Source of the DNA: Octopus sinensis
Lineage: Eukaryota
Direction of reading: 5' to 3'
DNA: 64,000 nt
NCBI RefSeq assembly: GCF_006345805.1
Contig: NC_043023.1
Span: 8,432,001-8,496,000 of the forward strand
Positions 23,456-28,597 of this stretch are shown here, in pieces. Made by a program: the position numbers and the translations under genes. Each line of letters opens with the position of its first letter. The stretch's first letter is position 1. The notes under the pieces are model-generated. The model was given only the letters and a program-made list of their open reading frames with translations, was not told the origin of the DNA and ran no database searches.

Positions 23456-23687
23456 AATTTCTTTTTGAAAATGACTTTATGGAATATATTATGAATGAAT
23501 CAATTAATTAGTGGTATGGGACTCAGAACTCAGAGCCGTGCTGCTATTGCCACTGCACAGAAATAAATATTGCAATTTGTAATTAAAGCTTGTTTATCCC
23601 ATGTCTTTGTCGTATGTGTGTGTGTATGTGTGCATATACATACATACATAGGCGCAGGAGTGGCTGTGTGGTAAGTAGCTTGCTAAC

Positions 23688-25747
23688 CTCTGACGTGTTC
23701 GGACGTGTTTTTTGTGCTGCTTCGAATGTCATGTGTTGCCACGTGAAATATTGAACTTTTTGACGACAGGTAGGACGTTTTGTATATTCTTAGGGGCTTA
23801 GTGAGGTTTATTGCTTGCCTTTAATGCTTTTTAACATTAATGTTATTTAGCATTAATATTATTTTTGCGGGTAATAAACTTCACTTTGCTTCAGATATAT
23901 TTTTTCTGCCTGTTGTCGTGTTTAAAGTCTCACTTTTTAGTGAGAATTGTGTTTTTTGAGGAGGCGTAGCCCCTCCTCAAAATATTTTGATTCATTTTGG
24001 ATTACCTATTGATTCACTTGTGGATTACCAGGAGGCACCAGGGACATTCGTGGACTGTGTTTGCAAGTACCAGAATAACCAAGGATTGCCGTGACGCTTG
24101 GCCAGGACTACCTTTTCGGCCAAAAAAAAAAAAAAATTCCTTTCCATATTTGAACTCTCATTCTTCTAGCTATCCTTTATTTGAACTCTGAACTGTATTT
24201 TTACCGTAATTCTTCGTTTCTATTTTGTTTTCTCTTCCAACTTTCTATCGCATTTGTGTTTTCTCCTTTTGAACTGTTGTTACATTTTATTTCTAAAAAT
24301 GGCAAAAGAATTAATTGTGTGGGAGCTGGAAGCTCCCAAAAAGTACCTAAAACAGCTGGAGGATAAGACCGTGGTACTGAGGACTTATTCAAAGTCGCTC
24401 AACACCATCACGGTCTTTCCGAAGGCAAAAATAATTGAAGAACTGGCAGAATATATGCCAGCCGTAAAATACATTACATGGGGAGCCAAATACGCAACGG
24501 TTTGGTTGCTGTTTGACACCCCAAAAACTGCTTGCGATTTTGCAAGCAAGCCCATTGAGGGCAAAGAAATCTTGTTTCTCCCTAGTTACAAGGGAGAAAA
24601 ATTAACAAGATTATGGGTCTGCGGCCTGCCACCCGGCATTGAACCCGAGTGGATAGAAGACTCTATCCGCCGGGGTCTGGGTGGCAGTAACGCAAAAACC
24701 CTAAATGTTAGGATACAACCTGCGGCTGATTGGGAGGGGTCAAAAGCTACTGTGACCCTATGGACCCAGTCAGCCAAGAGTCTGGTTTTGCCGGACTTTT
24801 TGAGGATGGCCGGGTCCAAGTATCCGGTGATGCTTGAGGGACGCCCCCACCAAGTGTCACCTGTGTTTGGAGACCGGCCACATCAAGAAGAGCTGCCCCA
24901 GGGACCAGAGTAGGATCCTGGAGCGGCTGATATTGGAGCCTCTCCCTGCCTTTTCAATGGAGGGAGAGAAACAAAATGAGGAGGGGGAAAAACCTCCTCC
25001 AAAAGAAAAAGAAAGGTGGGGAGCAATGGCGACCCACCAAGGGACCTGAAAGCTGCGGGAGAGGAGAACCCGGTGCGTACAGCTCCGGAACCTCAGCCTC
25101 CCGTGGCCCAGGGCCAGAAGAAAAAGAAAAAAAGGAGAAACGGTACGCCGCCGGCGGATTGTAACACGCAGACGGCGTTTCCCGAGTATCCCGGGTCCTC
25201 TCAGGCGGGTGTGCCGCCTGAGGGACAATTTGTGGAAGACTGTGTGCTCCTCTTTTTTAGAGGAGAAACGGTGGAAAGCACCGTGCGCAAAGTGAGAAAG
25301 AGAGGACGTTGGGAGGGACTCCGGTCCTGTACGGAGGACCCCGAGTGGCCTTCGCAGTTGACTGCGGAGGTCGTTGGAAGGGGTGATCTACGCAGGATCG
25401 TGGGTTCCTTCCCAGCGGACTCTTTCAAGATTATACCTCTGGACACCGGCCTGACCAGTGATTATTGCCTCGATGAGGCAAGAGCGATGGTCGGCCGGGT
25501 TACACAGGCTTTGTGAACATTTTTGTAACATGTTGAAGAGGGGGTTCATTGCCTCCTCTAAAATTTGTAAATTGTAAATTGTTGTACTGTATGTTAATAT
25601 TGAACAATGTTTTAGAGAAGCGAAAGTCGGCGGGCGCTTTTGTCTTCTCCCATCACCATCTTCATCCATCACCATCATTCATTAATGTCCTTGTCCAACC
25701 CGTAGCTACTCTGTGTGCTGCCCTAGTGACAAAATTTTTGAAATAAA
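23688..25747 (+). mobile_element. ORF1-only L1/Tx1-derived element, unit 1
   Basis: About 610-nt 5' region, ORF 24299-25516, 3' end aataaa; perfect 15-bp flanking repeat aagtagcttgctaac at 23673-23687 and 25746-25760. Confidence 0.8.
24299..25516 (+). pseudogene. Tx1/L1-type ORF1 (two RRM-like segments, CCHC knuckle, basic NLS-like tract, C-terminal domain), two compensating frameshifts
   Basis: RLWVCGLPPGIEPEWI, LPDFLRMAGSKYPVMLEGRP, CHLCLETGHIKKSC, KKKKKRRNG; shifts near 24848 and 25019. Confidence 0.8.
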
Positions 25748-25760
25748 GTAGCTTGCTAAC

Positions 25761-28030
25761 ACACATGCGCAGTTAGTCAGTTGCTTCCTGTTGAGCCAGA
25801 GTGGACGTGAGTAACAAGCTCCGTCCAATTATAGAAAAAAAGACCAAAAACGGAAAGTTGTCGAGGTGAGTGATTTTGTTTATTGTGAGTTGGGCATAAT
25901 TTATTACGTGCCAATTATTATTTCAGTAAGTTGTGTCCAACTCTGAGACAATTTCGCCTGCTCTAGGCGGCTGCCGTTTTTGTGTTTATTGAAAAAAAAC
26001 AGTGGAGGGGCGTATCCCCAGGAACCCAATACAGTTACTGTGCTGTGTTTGGGTTTGTTGAATTTATTCCCTTGTCAGAGTACTTCGCAAGAAAATTATA
26101 AAAATAAGCCACTATTGGATAACCTTTCGGACCCATTTTTGTGGACGTTGTGTTACAGTTGCAGCGTTCCAGGTTCAACTCAGGCCGGGAGTACCGTAAG
26201 GCCAGAAGATTTTTGCTGTGTTTTTTCTGTTTATTAACTTTCTTTTGAACTTCATTTAACTCCCCCTTTTGTTTTATTTGTTTATTGCAACTTTCCGTTG
26301 ATTTCTTCCTTTCTGTTGTGCTTTCTCCTTTTTGTTTTTTCAAAAATCTATCAAATTTTATTTGGACTTTTGAACTTTTTTCTTCTCGCTTTTTAAGTTT
26401 AATTTGAATATATGTAAAAAAAAAAAAATCATGGCAATGAAAAATAACAAAATTTTGGAATGGGAGATCATACCGCTTAAAAAGTGGTTAAAAGACCGTG
26501 AAGATAGGACGGTGGTGTTGAGAACCTACTCCAAGGCACTCGACACCATCGCCCTATTCGAAAAGACGGCAATTGAAAAGGAGTTGGCAGAGTATTTGCC
26601 AACAATTAAATTCATTTCCAGGGGCGTCAAATATGCAACGGTGTGGTTGCTATTTGACACCCCTGAAGAGGCTTGCAAATTTGCTAGCAAACCCCTGGAG
26701 GGTAAGGAAATTTTATTCCTGCCCACGTACCAAAAAAAGAAATTGACGAAAGCTTGGATTTGCGAGCTGCCACCCGGGATAGAACCCGAGTGGATAGAGG
26801 AGACTATCCGCCGGGGTCTGGGTAGCAGCGAAACTAAGCTCCTTAATGTAAAAGTTCTTCCTGCGGCTGCTTGGGTTGGGTCAAAAGCAATTTTGACCCT
26901 TTGGACCCAATCAGCCAATCTGGTTCTTCCAGATTTTTTGAAAATGGCCGGGTGCAGGTACCCGGTGATGCTTGAGGGTCGCCCCCCTAAGTGTCATCGG
27001 TGCTTGGAGTCCGGCCACATAAAGAAGAACTGTCCCCGGGAACAAATAGGATCCCGGAACAGTTAAGTGAAACCCCTGTAGAAGAGGGAATGATAGCGGC
27101 CGAGGAAGCAGAGGACTCCTCAAACAGAAGCCGAAAGAGGAAGGTGAGCAACAATGGGTGCTCACCAAAGGATACTAGGGATGAGGAGGGAAAGGCGAAT
27201 CTTCCGGCCACGGAGGAGACGCACACTCCCTCAGTTGAACAGAAAAAAAAGAAAAAGAGGAAGAGAAACGGGACATTACCGGCTGTCGGTGACATAGCAC
27301 CGGAATGTCCCGGAACTACGTCGGTTGGGGTTGTGCCACCGACAGGAGAAGAAATACCGTTGGCGGGAACTGTGCCGCCAACGAAAGAATTGAACGTATT
27401 GATCCTCTTCTATAGAGGCGGAGAAATTGAAAAGGTGATGGAAAAGCACCACAAGGGAGCACCTTTAGCCTTCACACAGACCCCGAATGGCCTCCGCAGG
27501 TAGCTGTGGAGGTTTCGGCGTTCGACGTGACGCTTGGGCTGAAGGAGCTCAATGAAGATTATAGCTTGGTCCCGGGCGACGCTAACTCAGAACTCGATTA
27601 CGTTCTGAGGGAGGCATGGTGGATGGTGGAGGGCGCAGGCACAAGTTATTTCGAGGACGAGTCAAATTGTGATACGACTTGAGGGGCCCCGACCAAGAGA
27701 TGGCGCATTCCTAAGGGAAGTGTAAGCCAGGTCTGGGAGGAGGGGCTTTGTGTATTGTATTTATATATGTAATTATTGAACTATGTTGTAATTAGTAATG
27801 GACTGCTAAGTCCAAAAATTGAAAAAATTGTAAGAGGTTTAATACCTCGTTTTGTGTTTTTCTTTAAAAAGAACAATGTTTTAGAGAAGCAGAAGTCGAC
27901 GGGCGCTTTTTGTCTTCTCCCATCCCCATCATCTTTCTTTCATTATCATTCACTTCATTAATGTCCTCGTCCAGCCCGCAAAGCTAACTTACTCTATGTA
28001 CTGCCTTTATGGCAAATGTTTCGAAATAAA
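25761..28030 (+). mobile_element. ORF1-only L1/Tx1-derived element, unit 2
   Basis: About 670-nt 5' region, ORF 26431-27682, 3' UTR homologous to unit 1, ends aataaa then gtagctttcttac. Confidence 0.8.
26431..27682 (+). pseudogene. Tx1/L1-type ORF1 paralog, two frameshifts
   Basis: KAWICELPPGIEPEWI, LPDFLKMAGCRYPVMLEGRPPKCHRCLESGHIKKNC, KKKKKRKRNG; shifts near 27045 and 27480. Confidence 0.8.
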
Positions 28031-28597
28031 GTAGCTTTCTTACCAACCACATGGTTCCGGGTTCAGTCTCACAGCGTGGCACCTTGGGCAAGTATCTTCT
28101 ACTATAGCCTCGGGCCGACCAAAGCCTTGTGTGTGGATTTGGTAGACGGAAACTGAAAGAAGCCCGTCGTATGTATGTATATATATATGTGAGTGTGCGT
28201 GTATGTTTGTGTGTCTGTGTTTGCCCCCTTAGCATTGCTTGACAACCGATGCTGGTGTGTTTATGTCCCCGTTACTTAGCGGTTCGGCTAAAGAGACCGA
28301 TACAATAAGTACTGGGCTTACAAAGAATATGTCCCGGGGTTGAGTTGCTCGACTAAAGGCGGTGCTCCAGCATGGCCGCAGTCAAATGACTGAAACAAGG
28401 AAAAAAAATACATACATACAAATATGTGTGTATGTACAGGCATTTATGGGCATAAGAAAATAAGACGCATCAAATACATTACATACATCAAATACAAAAT
28501 ATGTATATATTTATACATGCCAAACGAGAGAAAGCAAAAGGTGGGAGCTCTCAGATGATTACTATATCGTCTGAAAGAATTAAACACTTTTCTCACC

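What the first reader, a model, noticed from the sequence alone, without database searches (positions are those of the whole stretch)
23651..28405. Two different ORF1-only retroelements stacked at the same site of a SINE tRNA head: possible SINE-targeting non-autonomous family
Seen: a family A SINE is cut after aagtagcttgctaac. Unit 1 (2.06 kb) is bounded by a perfect 15-bp copy of that sequence (23673-23687, 25746-25760). Unit 2 (2.27 kb) follows and ends at a 2-mismatch copy (aagtagctttcttac), after which the SINE resumes. Each unit has a 5' region, one RRM-like + CCHC ORF of about 400 codons, a shared 3' UTR and a terminal AATAAA, with no EN/RT. The units are clearly diverged, so this is not a simple tandem duplication. 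Known: Tx1-clade LINEs include sequence-specific families (Keno in U2 snRNA, Mutsu in 5S rRNA, Dewa at tRNA genes), and ORF1-only HAL1 elements exist in mammals. Inference: an ORF1-only, trans-mobilised Tx1 derivative that targets a high-copy tRNA-derived SINE. Unit 2 inserted first and unit 1 later hit the regenerated target.
Basis: partly seen in the sequence, partly recalled or inferred. Interest (0 to 1): 0.85.

Follow-up and report, generated by a model that had tools for sequence, protein, structure and literature searches.

The report
ORF1-only retroelements that home into a SINE
Two diverged copies of a small octopus retroelement, which keeps only the RNA-binding ORF1 gene of a LINE, sit one behind the other at the same nucleotide of a SINE. 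Two further copies in Octopus sinensis start at that same position, so this is a site-specific parasite of another mobile element, a new variant of a known strategy.

Summary
A 398-bp SINE (23651-23687 + 28044-28404) is split after AAGTAGCTTGCTAAC. Two units (2,073 and 2,283 bp) are each followed by a copy of that 15-mer (15/15 and 13/15).

The units are about 75% identical in the ORF and 79% in the last ~170 nt, and not alignable elsewhere. Each has one ORF of about 410 codons, broken by two frameshifts, and ends in AATAAA overlapping the repeat. Neither has EN or RT.

- **Same site elsewhere:** two more copies in O. sinensis (L001, L002) have their 5' junction at the same SINE position, so 4 of 4.
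- **ORF identity:** the N-terminal half models as tandem RRMs plus a CCHC knuckle. It is homologous to ORF1 of an autonomous octopus LINE (APE, RT, zf-RVT) that is itself flanked by (ATT)n on both sides.
- **Selection:** dN/dS between subfamilies is 0.16-0.28.

Best reading: sequential, target-specific insertions of an ORF2-less L1/Tx1-type LINE derivative with a 15-bp target duplication, mobilised in trans.

Not shown: Tx1 clade membership, the autonomous partner, and whether the ORF1-only form propagates itself rather than arising repeatedly. The insertion order is only weakly supported.

Verdict: a new variant of a known kind, of moderate interest.

The parts
23636..23648 (+). Left copy of the 13-nt direct repeat ATACATACATACA flanking the host SINE (the SINE's own target duplication, or microsatellite)
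   Evidence: the repeat finder family D15, exact copy at 28408-28420
23651..23687 (+). 5' part of the host SINE (SINE positions 1-37), with a box A-like TGGCTGTGTGG. It ends inside the hairpin GGTAAG-TAGCTTG-CTTACC
   Evidence: BLASTN to the intact SINE copy at 37051-37472(-): positions 1-38, 92%. Identical heads at 14290, 49099, 63432 and 37472(-)
23673..23687 (+). 15-bp target copy A (AAGTAGCTTGCTAAC), SINE positions 23-37
23688..25745 (+). Unit 1, an ORF2-less LINE derivative (2,058 bp without the repeat). 5' UTR 23688-24298, ORF 24299-25516, 3' UTR 25517-25745
   Evidence: No TIR or LTR. No EN/RT
24299..25516 (+). Unit 1 ORF1-like reading frame, about 405 codons, with two frameshifts (near 24848-24854 and 25010-25016). 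The tandem RRM-like region ends at 24847
   Evidence: three-frame translation and peptide mapping. 67% aa identity to unit 2 over the N-terminal domain. dN/dS 0.19
24855..24896 (+). Unit 1 CCHC zinc knuckle (CHLCLETGHIKKSC), out of frame with the N-terminus
   Evidence: Pfam zf-CCHC E=0.11 on the bridged ORF
25602..25745 (+). Unit 1 conserved 3' tail shared with unit 2 (79-93% in blocks). Includes a candidate hairpin at 25615-25649 and AATAAA at 25742-25747
   Evidence: (D5-D9)
25746..25760 (+). 15-bp target copy B (AAGTAGCTTGCTAAC), identical to copy A. It is the right-hand duplication of unit 1 and the left-hand one of unit 2
25761..28028 (+). Unit 2, a second subfamily of the same element (2,268 bp without the repeat). 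5' UTR 25761-26430, ORF 26431-27682, 3' UTR 27683-28028
   Evidence: Closest relative is L002 (79% nt over 1.5 kb)
26431..27682 (+). Unit 2 ORF1-like reading frame, about 417 codons, with two frameshifts (near 27040-27048 and 27465-27472). The first 211 codons are intact (26431-27063)
   Evidence: AF2 model of residues 1-211 matches tandem-RRM proteins. BLASTP to LINE ORF1 P0007: 25% over 191 aa, E=5e-22
26992..27033 (+). Unit 2 CCHC zinc knuckle (CHRCLESGHIKKNC), in frame
   Evidence: Pfam zf-CCHC E=0.004, below the gathering score
27871..28028 (+). Unit 2 conserved 3' tail. Includes a candidate hairpin at 27884-27919 and AATAAA at 28025-28030
28029..28043 (+). 15-bp target copy C (AAGTAGCTTTCTTAC, 13/15 to A and B), continuous with the rest of the SINE
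28044..28404 (+). 3' part of the host SINE (positions 38 to about 394), with a box B-like GGTTCAGTC
   Evidence: BLASTN: SINE positions 23-394 map to 28029-28404, 91%. The joined empty site is a 398-bp SINE
28408..28420 (+). Right copy of the 13-nt direct repeat flanking the host SINE
   Evidence: D15

Best explanation
The region is one tRNA-like octopus SINE that was hit twice, at the same nucleotide, by two diverged subfamilies of a small target-specific non-LTR retrotransposon.

Each element keeps a LINE 5' UTR, a Type I ORF1 (two RRM-like domains, a CCHC knuckle and a basic, poorly conserved C-terminal half) and a roughly 170-nt 3' tail. It has no endonuclease or reverse transcriptase gene.

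**Proposed mechanism**
1. An APE-type ORF2 protein, supplied in trans by a related autonomous L1/Tx1-type LINE, nicks the SINE's anticodon-like hairpin. On the element's sense strand the site reads GGT^AAGTAGCTTGCTTAC^C.
2. The bottom strand is cut at the left mark and the top strand 15 nt downstream. This yields the 15-bp target duplication.
3. The element's AATAAA sits on its last bases, so its transcripts should end some 10-30 nt into the downstream SINE sequence.
4. That co-transcribed target sequence can base-pair with the nicked bottom strand (...GCAAGCTACTT-3'OH) and position the start of reverse transcription. This would explain the precise 3' junction without a poly(A) tract.
5. Each insertion regenerates the target on both sides, so a second element can land next to the first, giving the head-to-tail stack. 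Unit 2 probably came first and unit 1 second.

**Shown:** insertion into the SINE with duplication; the same site in four copies; ORF1 homology to an autonomous LINE; absence of ORF2 in both complete copies; purifying selection on the ORF during subfamily divergence.

**Inferred:** trans-mobilisation; the nick positions; read-through priming; the insertion order; Tx1 clade membership.
For: **Insertion into the SINE**
- The split SINE closes to a collinear 398-bp copy.
- The 15-mer is exact at both ends of unit 1 and 13/15 at the end of unit 2.
- There are no TIRs or LTRs.

**Same site in other copies**
- L001 (O. sinensis CM016886) reads ...GGCTGTGTGGTAAGTAGCTTGCTTCC|TGTGCATGCG.
- L002 (CM016865) reads ...GCCGTGTGGTAAGAAGTTTGCTTCC|ACTGCGCATG.
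- The sequences upstream of the SINE heads are unrelated, so these are different SINE loci.
- SINEs make up 11.6% of the O. vulgaris genome (PMC13282606). By my arithmetic, a random hit within about 3 nt of a given position in a 400-bp SINE has p of about 1e-3 per event.

**Independence of the copies**
- dS is 0.74-1.09 between subfamilies and dN/dS is 0.16-0.28 over 181-186 codons.
- The 5' termini of unit 2, L001 and L002 are homologous and start at the junction, so these are full-length insertions.

**LINE ORF1 identity**
- A profile search found 66 relatives. The best are Octopus CCHC proteins.
- P0007 (25% identity, E=5e-22) is the ORF1 of an element whose downstream frames hit Exo_endo_phos, RVT_1 and zf-RVT. 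A second copy lies in O. bimaculoides.
- That LINE is flanked by (ATT)n on both sides in both species and ends ggccAATAAA + 8 nt. The ORF1 family therefore belongs to target-specific LINEs with a terminal polyadenylation signal.
- The AF2 model (pLDDT 66, core 70-84) has tandem-RRM proteins as all of its top 50 PDB matches.
- RRM + CCHC is the Type I ORF1p. In non-mammalian animals it is associated with Tx1 (PMC5203782).

**No ORF2**
-. Each unit has only 229-346 nt between the ORF stop and its 3' end.

**Literature context**
- Tx1-clade families that target other transposons are known (PMC4494074).
- L1-Tx1 families are recently active in O. vulgaris.
- ORF1-only L1 derivatives (HAL1) are known (PMC5753468).
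Against: - Only two copies have both ends. L001 and L002 are truncated at or before the end of the ORF, and no SINE remainder lies downstream of them. The 3' junction rule therefore rests on n=2, and both cases are at one locus.
- No autonomous element with the same 3' tail was found in the roughly 197 kb of octopus DNA I could read.
- The segment between the ORF stop and the shared tail shows no significant similarity between the units (139 of 1000 shuffles score as high). A single ancient loss of ORF2 is not demonstrated.
- The low dN/dS could have been earned in full-length parents rather than in an ORF1-only lineage.
- All four ORFs are damaged, so no active copy is known.
- The C-terminal half shows no detectable similarity to the C-terminal domain of the related LINE ORF1s (hhalign probability 2%).
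- The 3' hairpin is weak (z = -2.2 and -1.5, two sequences only).
- Only two annotated proteins of this family exist among about 15 billion, so copy number may be very low.
Confidence: 0.6

Rival explanations
1. There is a full-length, autonomous SINE-targeting LINE, and the two units are not members of a self-propagating ORF1-only lineage. Each is a one-off ORF2-less derivative made during or before retrotransposition from a different full-length subfamily. It could be a spliced or internally deleted RNA, as in spliced integrated L1 copies or the repeatedly arising HAL1s.
For: - HAL1 arose independently several times (PMC5753468).
- The ORF-stop-to-tail segments of the two units are not demonstrably homologous. 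This fits two separate ORF2 losses.
- The low dN/dS is equally expected if selection acted in full-length parents.
- The family is rare among annotated proteins.
Against: - Both complete copies, from subfamilies with dS of about 1.1, have the same architecture: ORF1 stop, then a short spacer, then the shared tail.
- L002 also shows no ORF2 after its ORF stop, although it is truncated there.
- No full-length relative with this tail was seen, but very little genome was searchable.
Confidence: 0.25
2. The stack entered the SINE in one event, as a read-through dimer transcript from an older stacked source locus. The outer repeat copies A and C would then be the true target duplication, and copy B would be carried from the source.
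For: - The AATAAA at the end of unit 1 is followed immediately by unit 2, so read-through is conceivable.
- The GCTAAC variant of the 15-mer also occurs in an unrelated SINE copy at 63454. The identity of A and B could therefore reflect a shared SINE variant rather than a fresh duplication.
Against: - A and B are 15/15 identical, while A and C differ at 2 positions. This fits A/B as the youngest duplication.
- The model still needs an earlier sequential stacking event at the source, so it only moves the problem.
Confidence: 0.07
3. The 37-nt SINE head is part of the element, as a composite element or 5' transduction. In that case the shared 5' junction in L001 and L002 would not show target specificity.
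For: L001 and L002 have the SINE head upstream but no SINE remainder downstream.
Against: - In the window, unit 2 is preceded by only the 15-mer, not the 37-nt head.
- The SINE body resumes in exact register after unit 2, and the joined halves make a normal SINE with its own flanking repeat.
- L001 and L002 are 3'-truncated by unrelated sequence, which explains the missing remainder.
Confidence: 0.04
4. A single insertion followed by tandem duplication or unequal crossing-over between the flanking repeats.
For: Head-to-tail arrangement with a shared 15-mer between the units.
Against: - The units are 75% identical in the ORF, with dS of 1.09.
- Their 5' UTRs and most of their 3' UTRs do not align.
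- Unit 2 is much closer to L002 from another chromosome (79% over 1.5 kb, dS 0.28) than to unit 1.
Confidence: 0.01

Closest known systems
Tx1-clade target-specific LINEs that insert into other transposons (Tx1L into Tx1D piggyBac elements; Tx1-Mar into Mariner-N4_AMi; Tx1-8_Crp and Tx1-4_AMi into LTR elements). Source: Kojima 2015, PMC4494074
   Same: - Precise, sequence-specific insertion into a fixed site of a multicopy mobile element.
- APE-type LINE background.
- ORF1 of the RRM + CCHC kind.
- The nearest autonomous relative found here has APE, RT and zf-RVT and is itself target-specific.
   Different: - The target is a tRNA-like SINE. I found no report of that in the searchable library.
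- The element has no ORF2 at all.
- The host is a cephalopod.
- Clade membership by RT phylogeny could not be tested.
HAL1 (half-L1), the ORF1-only non-autonomous L1 derivatives of mammals. Source: Bao and Jurka 2010, as summarised in PMC5753468
   Same: A LINE derivative that keeps the 5' UTR, ORF1 and 3' end but lacks ORF2, and so presumably depends on ORF2p supplied in trans.
   Different: - HAL1 carries the Type II (Transposase_22: coiled coil, RRM, CTD) ORF1 and has no target specificity.
- Here the ORF1 is Type I (tandem RRM-like + CCHC), with no Transposase_22 hit.
- Here insertion is site-specific.
- Self-propagation of the ORF1-only form is not shown here.
Kibi and Koshi, the microsatellite-specific Tx1-clade LINEs of teleosts. 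Source: Kojima and Fujiwara 2004, via PMC4494074
   Same: The autonomous octopus LINE whose ORF1 is homologous to the unit ORF sits in (ATT)n on both sides in two species. This resembles Kibi in (TC)n and Koshi in (TTC)n.
   Different: - Different repeat and different phylum.
- It is a relative of the finding, not the finding itself.
- The 3' (ATT)n could in part be the element's own tail.
Dewa (Tx1 clade, spacer of tRNA-Leu clusters) and Dada DNA transposons (inside tRNA and snRNA genes, including tandem insertions of two families). Source: PMC3706591
   Same: - Multicopy Pol III-type sequences serve as safe landing sites.
- Dada-U1A and Dada-U1B are reported as tandem insertions at one target, like the stack here.
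   Different: - Dewa targets a spacer, not the tRNA-like body.
- Dada is a DNA transposon with a transposase and 6-7 bp duplications. Here the duplication is 15 bp, the ORF is a LINE ORF1 and there are no terminal or subterminal inverted repeats.

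Membership tests
Non-LTR retrotransposon (LINE-derived element) | Insertion flanked by a target-site duplication, with no LTRs or terminal inverted repeats | tested here: met
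   15-bp direct repeat at both ends of each unit. The inverted-repeat scan found no terminal repeats
Non-LTR retrotransposon (LINE-derived element) | Encodes a protein homologous to the ORF1 of a bona fide LINE | tested here: met
   Profile hit to P0007 (E=8e-14). Pairwise 25% over 191 aa, E=5e-22. P0007 lies directly upstream of APE, RT and zf-RVT frames
Non-LTR retrotransposon (LINE-derived element) | Encodes a reverse transcriptase (autonomous element) | tested here: not met
   No RT or EN by Pfam or tblastn, and there is no room for one. If the element is mobile, it is non-autonomous
Tx1 clade | RT sequence groups with Tx1 in a phylogeny of LINE reverse transcriptases | not testable with these tools
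   The units have no RT, and no reference RT set was available for the relative in L003 and L004. Only the domain content (Exo_endo_phos, RVT_1, zf-RVT) and weak similarity to human L1 ORF2p (E=0.004) place that relative in the L1/Tx1 group
Tx1 clade | Type I ORF1p (RRM domains plus a CCHC knuckle) | tested here: met
   C-X2-C-X4-H-X4-C is present. The AF2 model matches tandem-RRM proteins. The type definition is taken from PMC5203782. This feature is not exclusive to Tx1
Tx1 clade | Sequence-specific insertion (common in the clade, not universal) | tested here: met
   4 of 4 5' junctions fall at SINE positions 36-38. The relative sits in (ATT)n
HAL1-type ORF1-only non-autonomous LINE derivative | ORF1 retained, ORF2 absent, LINE 5' and 3' ends retained | tested here: met
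   Both copies with two ends have this structure
HAL1-type ORF1-only non-autonomous LINE derivative | Derived from mammalian L1 (Transposase_22 ORF1) | tested here: not met
   No Transposase_22 hit, and the host is an octopus. This is an analogue, not a member
HAL1-type ORF1-only non-autonomous LINE derivative | The ORF2-less form itself amplified, giving many copies that share the same ORF1-to-tail junction | tested here: inconclusive
   Only two informative copies exist. The junction segments are not significantly similar. A genome-wide search was not possible
Dada DNA transposons (tRNA/snRNA-targeting) | Dada transposase, 6-7 bp duplication, (sub)terminal inverted repeats | tested here: not met
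   The duplication is 15 bp, the ORF is a LINE ORF1 and there are no inverted termini. Features are taken from PMC3706591
tRNA-derived SINE (the target) | Head recognisable as a tRNA with box A and box B | tested here: inconclusive
   Box A-like TGGCTGTGTGG and box B-like GGTTCAGTC are visible. ARAGORN finds no tRNA in the window, and the Rfam tRNA model gives no hit at E<=10 on an intact copy. Octopus tRNA-derived SINEs are documented (Ohshima and Okada 1994, cited in PMC4758252)

The most novel reading that the evidence does not exclude
The SINE specificity may be carried by the element's own RNA rather than by a dedicated endonuclease.

The polyadenylation signal sits on the last bases of the element, so every transcript would end with 10-30 nt of SINE sequence. 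That tag could anneal to nicked or breathing SINE DNA. It would let an ORF1-only element borrow the ORF2 protein of any resident L1/Tx1-type LINE and still home to one nucleotide of a SINE family that covers about a tenth of the genome.

This would be a self-sustaining ORF1-only lineage, kept under purifying selection, whose target choice is RNA-guided.
Probability: 0.12. Interest if true: 0.8.

Novelty: new variant of a known kind. Interest (0 to 1): 0.5.

Why it matters
Target-specific retrotransposons are thought to survive by landing in harmless multicopy sequences such as rDNA, snRNA and tRNA clusters, microsatellites and a few DNA transposons. A family that homes into the hairpin of a SINE extends that safe-haven strategy to the most abundant repeat class of the octopus genome. 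SINEs make up 11.6% of the O. vulgaris genome.

The family combines this homing with loss of ORF2, so it would be a parasite that depends on one mobile element and lives inside another.

If the ORF1-only form propagates, it is an independent, non-mammalian counterpart of HAL1. It would offer a natural system to ask what ORF1p does for an RNA that must capture ORF2p in trans. It would also let one ask how much of a LINE's target choice comes from co-transcribed target sequence.

Practically, such stacks are a source of chimeric gene models in octopus annotations. P0002 fuses this ORF to an integrase fragment.

Tried and rejected
- **Alignment-based homologue search:** searching with a 16-sequence alignment returned only P0001, so it gave no access to more loci.
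- **Metagenome scans:** two scans with the long ENA/JGI relatives (A7, P0042) confirmed no locus. I could not test whether those 650-860-aa relatives precede a Tx1-type ORF2 or sit in U2 or 5S genes.
- **Exact look-ups:** eleven window ORFs were looked up and none is on record. The species and the orthologous loci remain unidentified.
- **C-terminal half of the ORF:** profile-profile comparison with the C-terminal 'FPxDVG' domain of related ORF1s gave 2% probability. Homology was not established. I judged a second structure prediction pointless with a 3-sequence alignment.
- **tRNA detection:** ARAGORN on the whole window and Rfam on the region and on an intact SINE gave no tRNA or LINE 3'-element hit.
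- **Spacer homology:** local alignment of the ORF-stop-to-tail spacers of the two units was not better than shuffles.
- **Partner search:** 3'-tail motifs were searched in the four fetched loci and in the window, with no further copy and no candidate partner.
- **PDB sequence searches:** the relative's APE gave nothing. Its C-terminal part hit human L1 ORF2p only weakly.
- **Rejected ideas:** tandem duplication (divergence too high); a DNA transposon such as Dada (wrong duplication length, no inverted termini, LINE ORF1); a host gene family (has UTRs, a target duplication, a fixed insertion site, and all copies are pseudogenised).

Full report
**1. What is in the sequence**

The window is animal DNA packed with repeats, and every relative I could retrieve comes from Octopus.

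- At 23651 a SINE begins (GGCGCAGGAGTGGCTGTGTGGTAAGTAGCTTGCTAAC). Intact copies of the same SINE lie at 14290, 49099 and 63432 (+) and at 37472 (-).
- The copy at 23651 stops after SINE position 37. It resumes at 28044 in exact register (CAACCACATGGTTCCGGGTTCAGTC...) and runs to 28404.
- BLASTN maps SINE positions 1-38 to 23651-23688 and positions 23-394 to 28029-28404.
- Joining the flanks gives a normal 398-bp SINE. It is itself bracketed by a 13-nt direct repeat.

Between the halves lie two units of 2,073 and 2,283 bp.

- Each is followed by a copy of SINE positions 23-37. AAGTAGCTTGCTAAC is exact at 23673 and 25746, and AAGTAGCTTTCTTAC (13/15) lies at 28029.
- With up to 2 mismatches the 15-mer occurs 7 times in 64 kb, only in SINE heads and at unit ends. 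Shuffled sequence gives 0.10.
- There are no terminal inverted or long terminal repeats.

**2. Anatomy of the units**

- Each unit has a 5' UTR of 611 or 670 nt, one long reading frame, and a 3' UTR of 229 or 346 nt.
- Only the last ~170 nt of the 3' UTRs are shared (79% overall, blocks of 92-93%).
- AATAAA lies on the very last bases (25742-25747 and 28025-28030) and overlaps the repeat by 2 nt. No poly(A) tract follows.
- The reading frames are about 405 and 417 codons only after bridging two frameshifts each. No other stops occur.
- In unit 1 the first frameshift separates the N-terminal domain from the CCHC knuckle.
- Nothing resembling an endonuclease or reverse transcriptase is present, and there is no room for one.
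- The units align only in about 585 nt of ORF (75%) and in the tail. Their 5' UTRs and the spacer after the stop codon are not significantly similar.

**3. What the ORF is**

- Pfam sees only a sub-threshold zinc knuckle.
- A profile of the N-terminal 210 residues searched against 1.84 billion representatives found 66 proteins at E<=1e-3. The best are uncharacterised CCHC proteins of O. vulgaris, O. bimaculoides and O. sinensis. There are also 650-860-aa proteins from environmental assemblies with the same layout.
- One of them, P0007 (25% identity over 191 aa, pairwise E=5e-22), could be placed on its contig. It is the first ORF of an element whose following, partly degraded frames hit Exo_endo_phos, RVT_1 and zf-RVT.
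- A second copy, with ORF1 running into the APE domain, lies in O. bimaculoides.
- The unit ORF is therefore a LINE ORF1.
- An AlphaFold2 model of residues 1-211 (7-sequence alignment, pLDDT 66, core 70-84) has two beta-alpha-beta-beta-alpha-beta-like modules. All of its 50 best PDB matches are tandem-RRM proteins such as NONO/SFPQ, IMP3 RRM12 and hnRNP A1 UP1 (E about 1e-4). TM-scores are low because the domain orientation differs.
- RRM plus CCHC is the Type I ORF1p. In non-mammalian animals it goes with Tx1-type elements (PMC5203782).
- The C-terminal half (a basic KKKKKRKRNG stretch, then a conserved DPEWP motif) shows no detectable similarity to the C-terminal domain of the related ORF1s.

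**4. Is the SINE really a target?**

The protein database holds only two close relatives, both from O. sinensis. I read both loci.

- In L001 the element's 5' end abuts ...GGCTGTGTGGTAAGTAGCTTGCTTCC|.
- In L002 it abuts ...GCCGTGTGGTAAGAAGTTTGCTTCC|.
- Both are the same SINE head, cut within 2 nt of the same position. The sequences upstream of the heads are unrelated, so these are different SINE loci.
- Both copies are truncated at their 3' side by unrelated sequence, so they say nothing about the 3' junction.
- The 5' termini of unit 2, L001 and L002 are homologous from the first bases (ACACATGCGCAGTTAGTCAGTTGCTTCC versus TGTGCATGCGTTGATTAGTTGCTTCC). These are therefore full-length 5' ends.

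Four insertion events thus share one site.

- SINEs make up 11.6% of the O. vulgaris genome (PMC13282606). A random insertion hits a given 3-nt slot of a 400-bp SINE with probability of about 1e-3, so three repeats of the first event by chance are about 1e-9. This is my arithmetic and assumes independence.
- Independence is supported by the divergence. dS is 0.74-1.09 between subfamilies, and unit 2 is closest to L002 on another chromosome (dS 0.28).
- dN/dS of 0.16-0.28 shows that the ORF was under purifying selection while the subfamilies diverged.

**5. The target site**

- SINE positions 20-38 form a perfect 6-bp inverted repeat with a 7-nt loop (GGTAAG TAGCTTG CTTACC), in the place of an anticodon arm.
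- The 15-bp duplication runs from inside the left arm to one base before the end of the right arm.
- For an element inserted in this orientation, target-primed reverse transcription implies a bottom-strand nick opposite GGT^AAG and a top-strand nick after CTTAC. Both nicks fall in a CTTACC motif, one on each strand. This is inference from the duplication, not a measurement.

**6. Mechanism proposed**

- The polyadenylation signal is on the last bases, so transcripts should extend 10-30 nt into the downstream SINE copy before cleavage.
- That co-transcribed target sequence is complementary to the 3' end of the nicked bottom strand. It could position the start of reverse transcription. This would explain the precise 3' junction and the lack of a poly(A) tract.
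- Co-transcription with the target is known to strengthen specific integration in other target-specific LINEs, as discussed in PMC4494074.
- The autonomous relative in L003 and L004 has the same design. It ends ggccAATAAA + 8 nt and then runs into (ATT)n, with (ATT)n also on its 5' side in both species, including a 5'-truncated copy. The ORF1 family therefore belongs to a target-specific LINE lineage.
- A conserved hairpin in the shared tail (25615-25649 and 27884-27919) is a candidate recognition element for the partner's RT. Its only two differences are wobble-compatible. The support is weak (dG -15.6 and -12.8 kcal/mol, z = -2.2 and -1.5, n=2).
- The ORF2 protein must come in trans. No partner was found in the DNA available to me.

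**7. The stack**

- Each insertion regenerates the 15-mer on both sides, so re-insertion next to a resident copy is expected for a site-specific element.
- The copies flanking unit 1 are 15/15 identical. The copies flanking unit 2 are 13/15. The SINE consensus is AAGTAGCTTGCTTAC, so the left and right copies each carry one private change.
- This favours unit 2 first and unit 1 second, but only modestly.
- The GCTAAC variant also exists in an unrelated SINE copy (63454). A one-step insertion of a read-through dimer cannot be strictly excluded.

**8. Comparison with what is known**

- Target-specific Tx1-clade LINEs are well documented, including families that insert into other transposons: Tx1L into Tx1D, Tx1-Mar into Mariner-N4_AMi, and others into LTR elements. 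Microsatellite-specific families (Kibi, Koshi) are also known (PMC4494074).
- Keno, Mutsu and Dewa target U2 genes, 5S genes and the tRNA-Leu spacer. Dada DNA transposons insert inside tRNA and snRNA genes and occur as tandem insertions of two families (PMC3706591).
- ORF1-only L1 derivatives (HAL1) arose several times in mammals (PMC5753468).
- L1-Tx1 families are recently active in O. vulgaris.
- I found no report of a LINE-type element that homes into a SINE, nor of an ORF1-only element with target specificity. The library is limited, and Repbase could not be consulted.
- The finding is therefore a new variant of a known kind. It works like a Tx1-type site-specific LINE and like HAL1 at once. 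It fails the membership test for HAL1 because the ORF1 type is different. It cannot be tested for Tx1 because it has no RT.

**9. What remains open**

- Does the ORF2-less form propagate as such, or is it produced again and again from full-length SINE-targeting parents?
- What is the partner, and which clade does it belong to?
- What are the copy number and activity? All four ORFs seen are damaged.
- Where do transcripts end?
- What was the order of insertion?
- The species of the window was not identified.

**10. Verdict**

SINE homing, LINE ORF1 origin, independent insertions and absence of ORF2 are supported. Tx1 membership, trans-mobilisation and family-level ORF1-only status are plausible but unproven. 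This is a neat, probably undescribed case within a well-understood class. Interest: 0.5.

Noticed in passing
window 23273-23444 and 28691-28862 (also 23079-23155 and 23180-23230): A 172-nt inverted repeat, 97% complementary, brackets the split SINE and both units. Without the SINE and the units, only about 0.5 kb lies between the arms, so the SINE itself sits inside a MITE- or foldback-like element. The nesting is three levels deep. Extra partial copies of the left arm lie just upstream.
   Followed up: partly
L003 about 9780-15348 (O. sinensis CM016872) and L004 about 11864-16983 (O. bimaculoides CM046603): An autonomous LINE (ORF1, then APE, RT and zf-RVT) whose ORF1 is the homologue of the unit ORF. 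It is flanked by (ATT)n on both sides in both species and ends ggccAATAAA + 8 nt. It is apparently a microsatellite-specific L1/Tx1-type family. The L004 copy is 5'-truncated yet still has (ATT)n upstream.
   Followed up: partly
window 23767 and 25863; L001 9584; L002 15837: All four copies of the SINE-targeting family carry a splice-donor-like motif (AG|GTRAG) 79-107 nt from their 5' end. It is followed by a pyrimidine-rich stretch (62-65% C+T) with repeated TTGAACT motifs. In three of the four copies (unit 2, L001, L002) an AG lies shortly before the ATG; in unit 1 the nearest is about 130 nt upstream. This could be a retained 5' UTR intron.
   Followed up: no
window 25761-25775 (unit 2), L001 9490-9505, L002 15740-15755; window 23690-23710 (unit 1); L003 9789-9806: The first bases of the elements carry a GCGCATGCGC-like palindrome (unit 2, L001, L002) or two GACGTG / GGACGTG motifs (unit 1 and the (ATT)n-specific LINE). 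These look like internal promoter elements placed right at the 5' end.
   Followed up: no
L002 10001-36638 (gene model P0002): The NCBI gene model 'K02A2.6-like' of O. sinensis splices the first 46 codons of this element's ORF onto an integrase (rve) fragment. This is a chimeric annotation caused by nested repeats.
   Followed up: partly
window 56485-59993 (-) and 60780-62690 (+); 30092-31745 (-): Penelope-like elements. Two nearly identical partial copies face each other (ORFs of 241 and 234 aa, and of 228 and 236 aa, almost the same sequence on opposite strands). A third copy lies at about 30-31.7 kb.
   Followed up: no
window 52858-55814 (+); 40471-42644 (-); 22219-22719 (-); 34900-35470 (-); 45938-46292 (+); 1-815: Other mobile-element remains: an APE/RT LINE with RTE-like look; an RT followed by a CxxC...H...C finger; a Tc1/mariner-like transposase remnant; and three fragments similar to the ORF2 of the L003 LINE. 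None shares the units' 3' tail.
   Followed up: partly
window 37051-37472 (-) and the other SINE copies: The SINE body contains CTTGGGCAAGTGTCTTCTACTATAGCCTC, which from memory resembles the CORE/MIR core. Octopus OR2 is listed as a CORE-SINE (PMC4758252). Neither ARAGORN nor the Rfam tRNA model recognises the head.
   Followed up: partly
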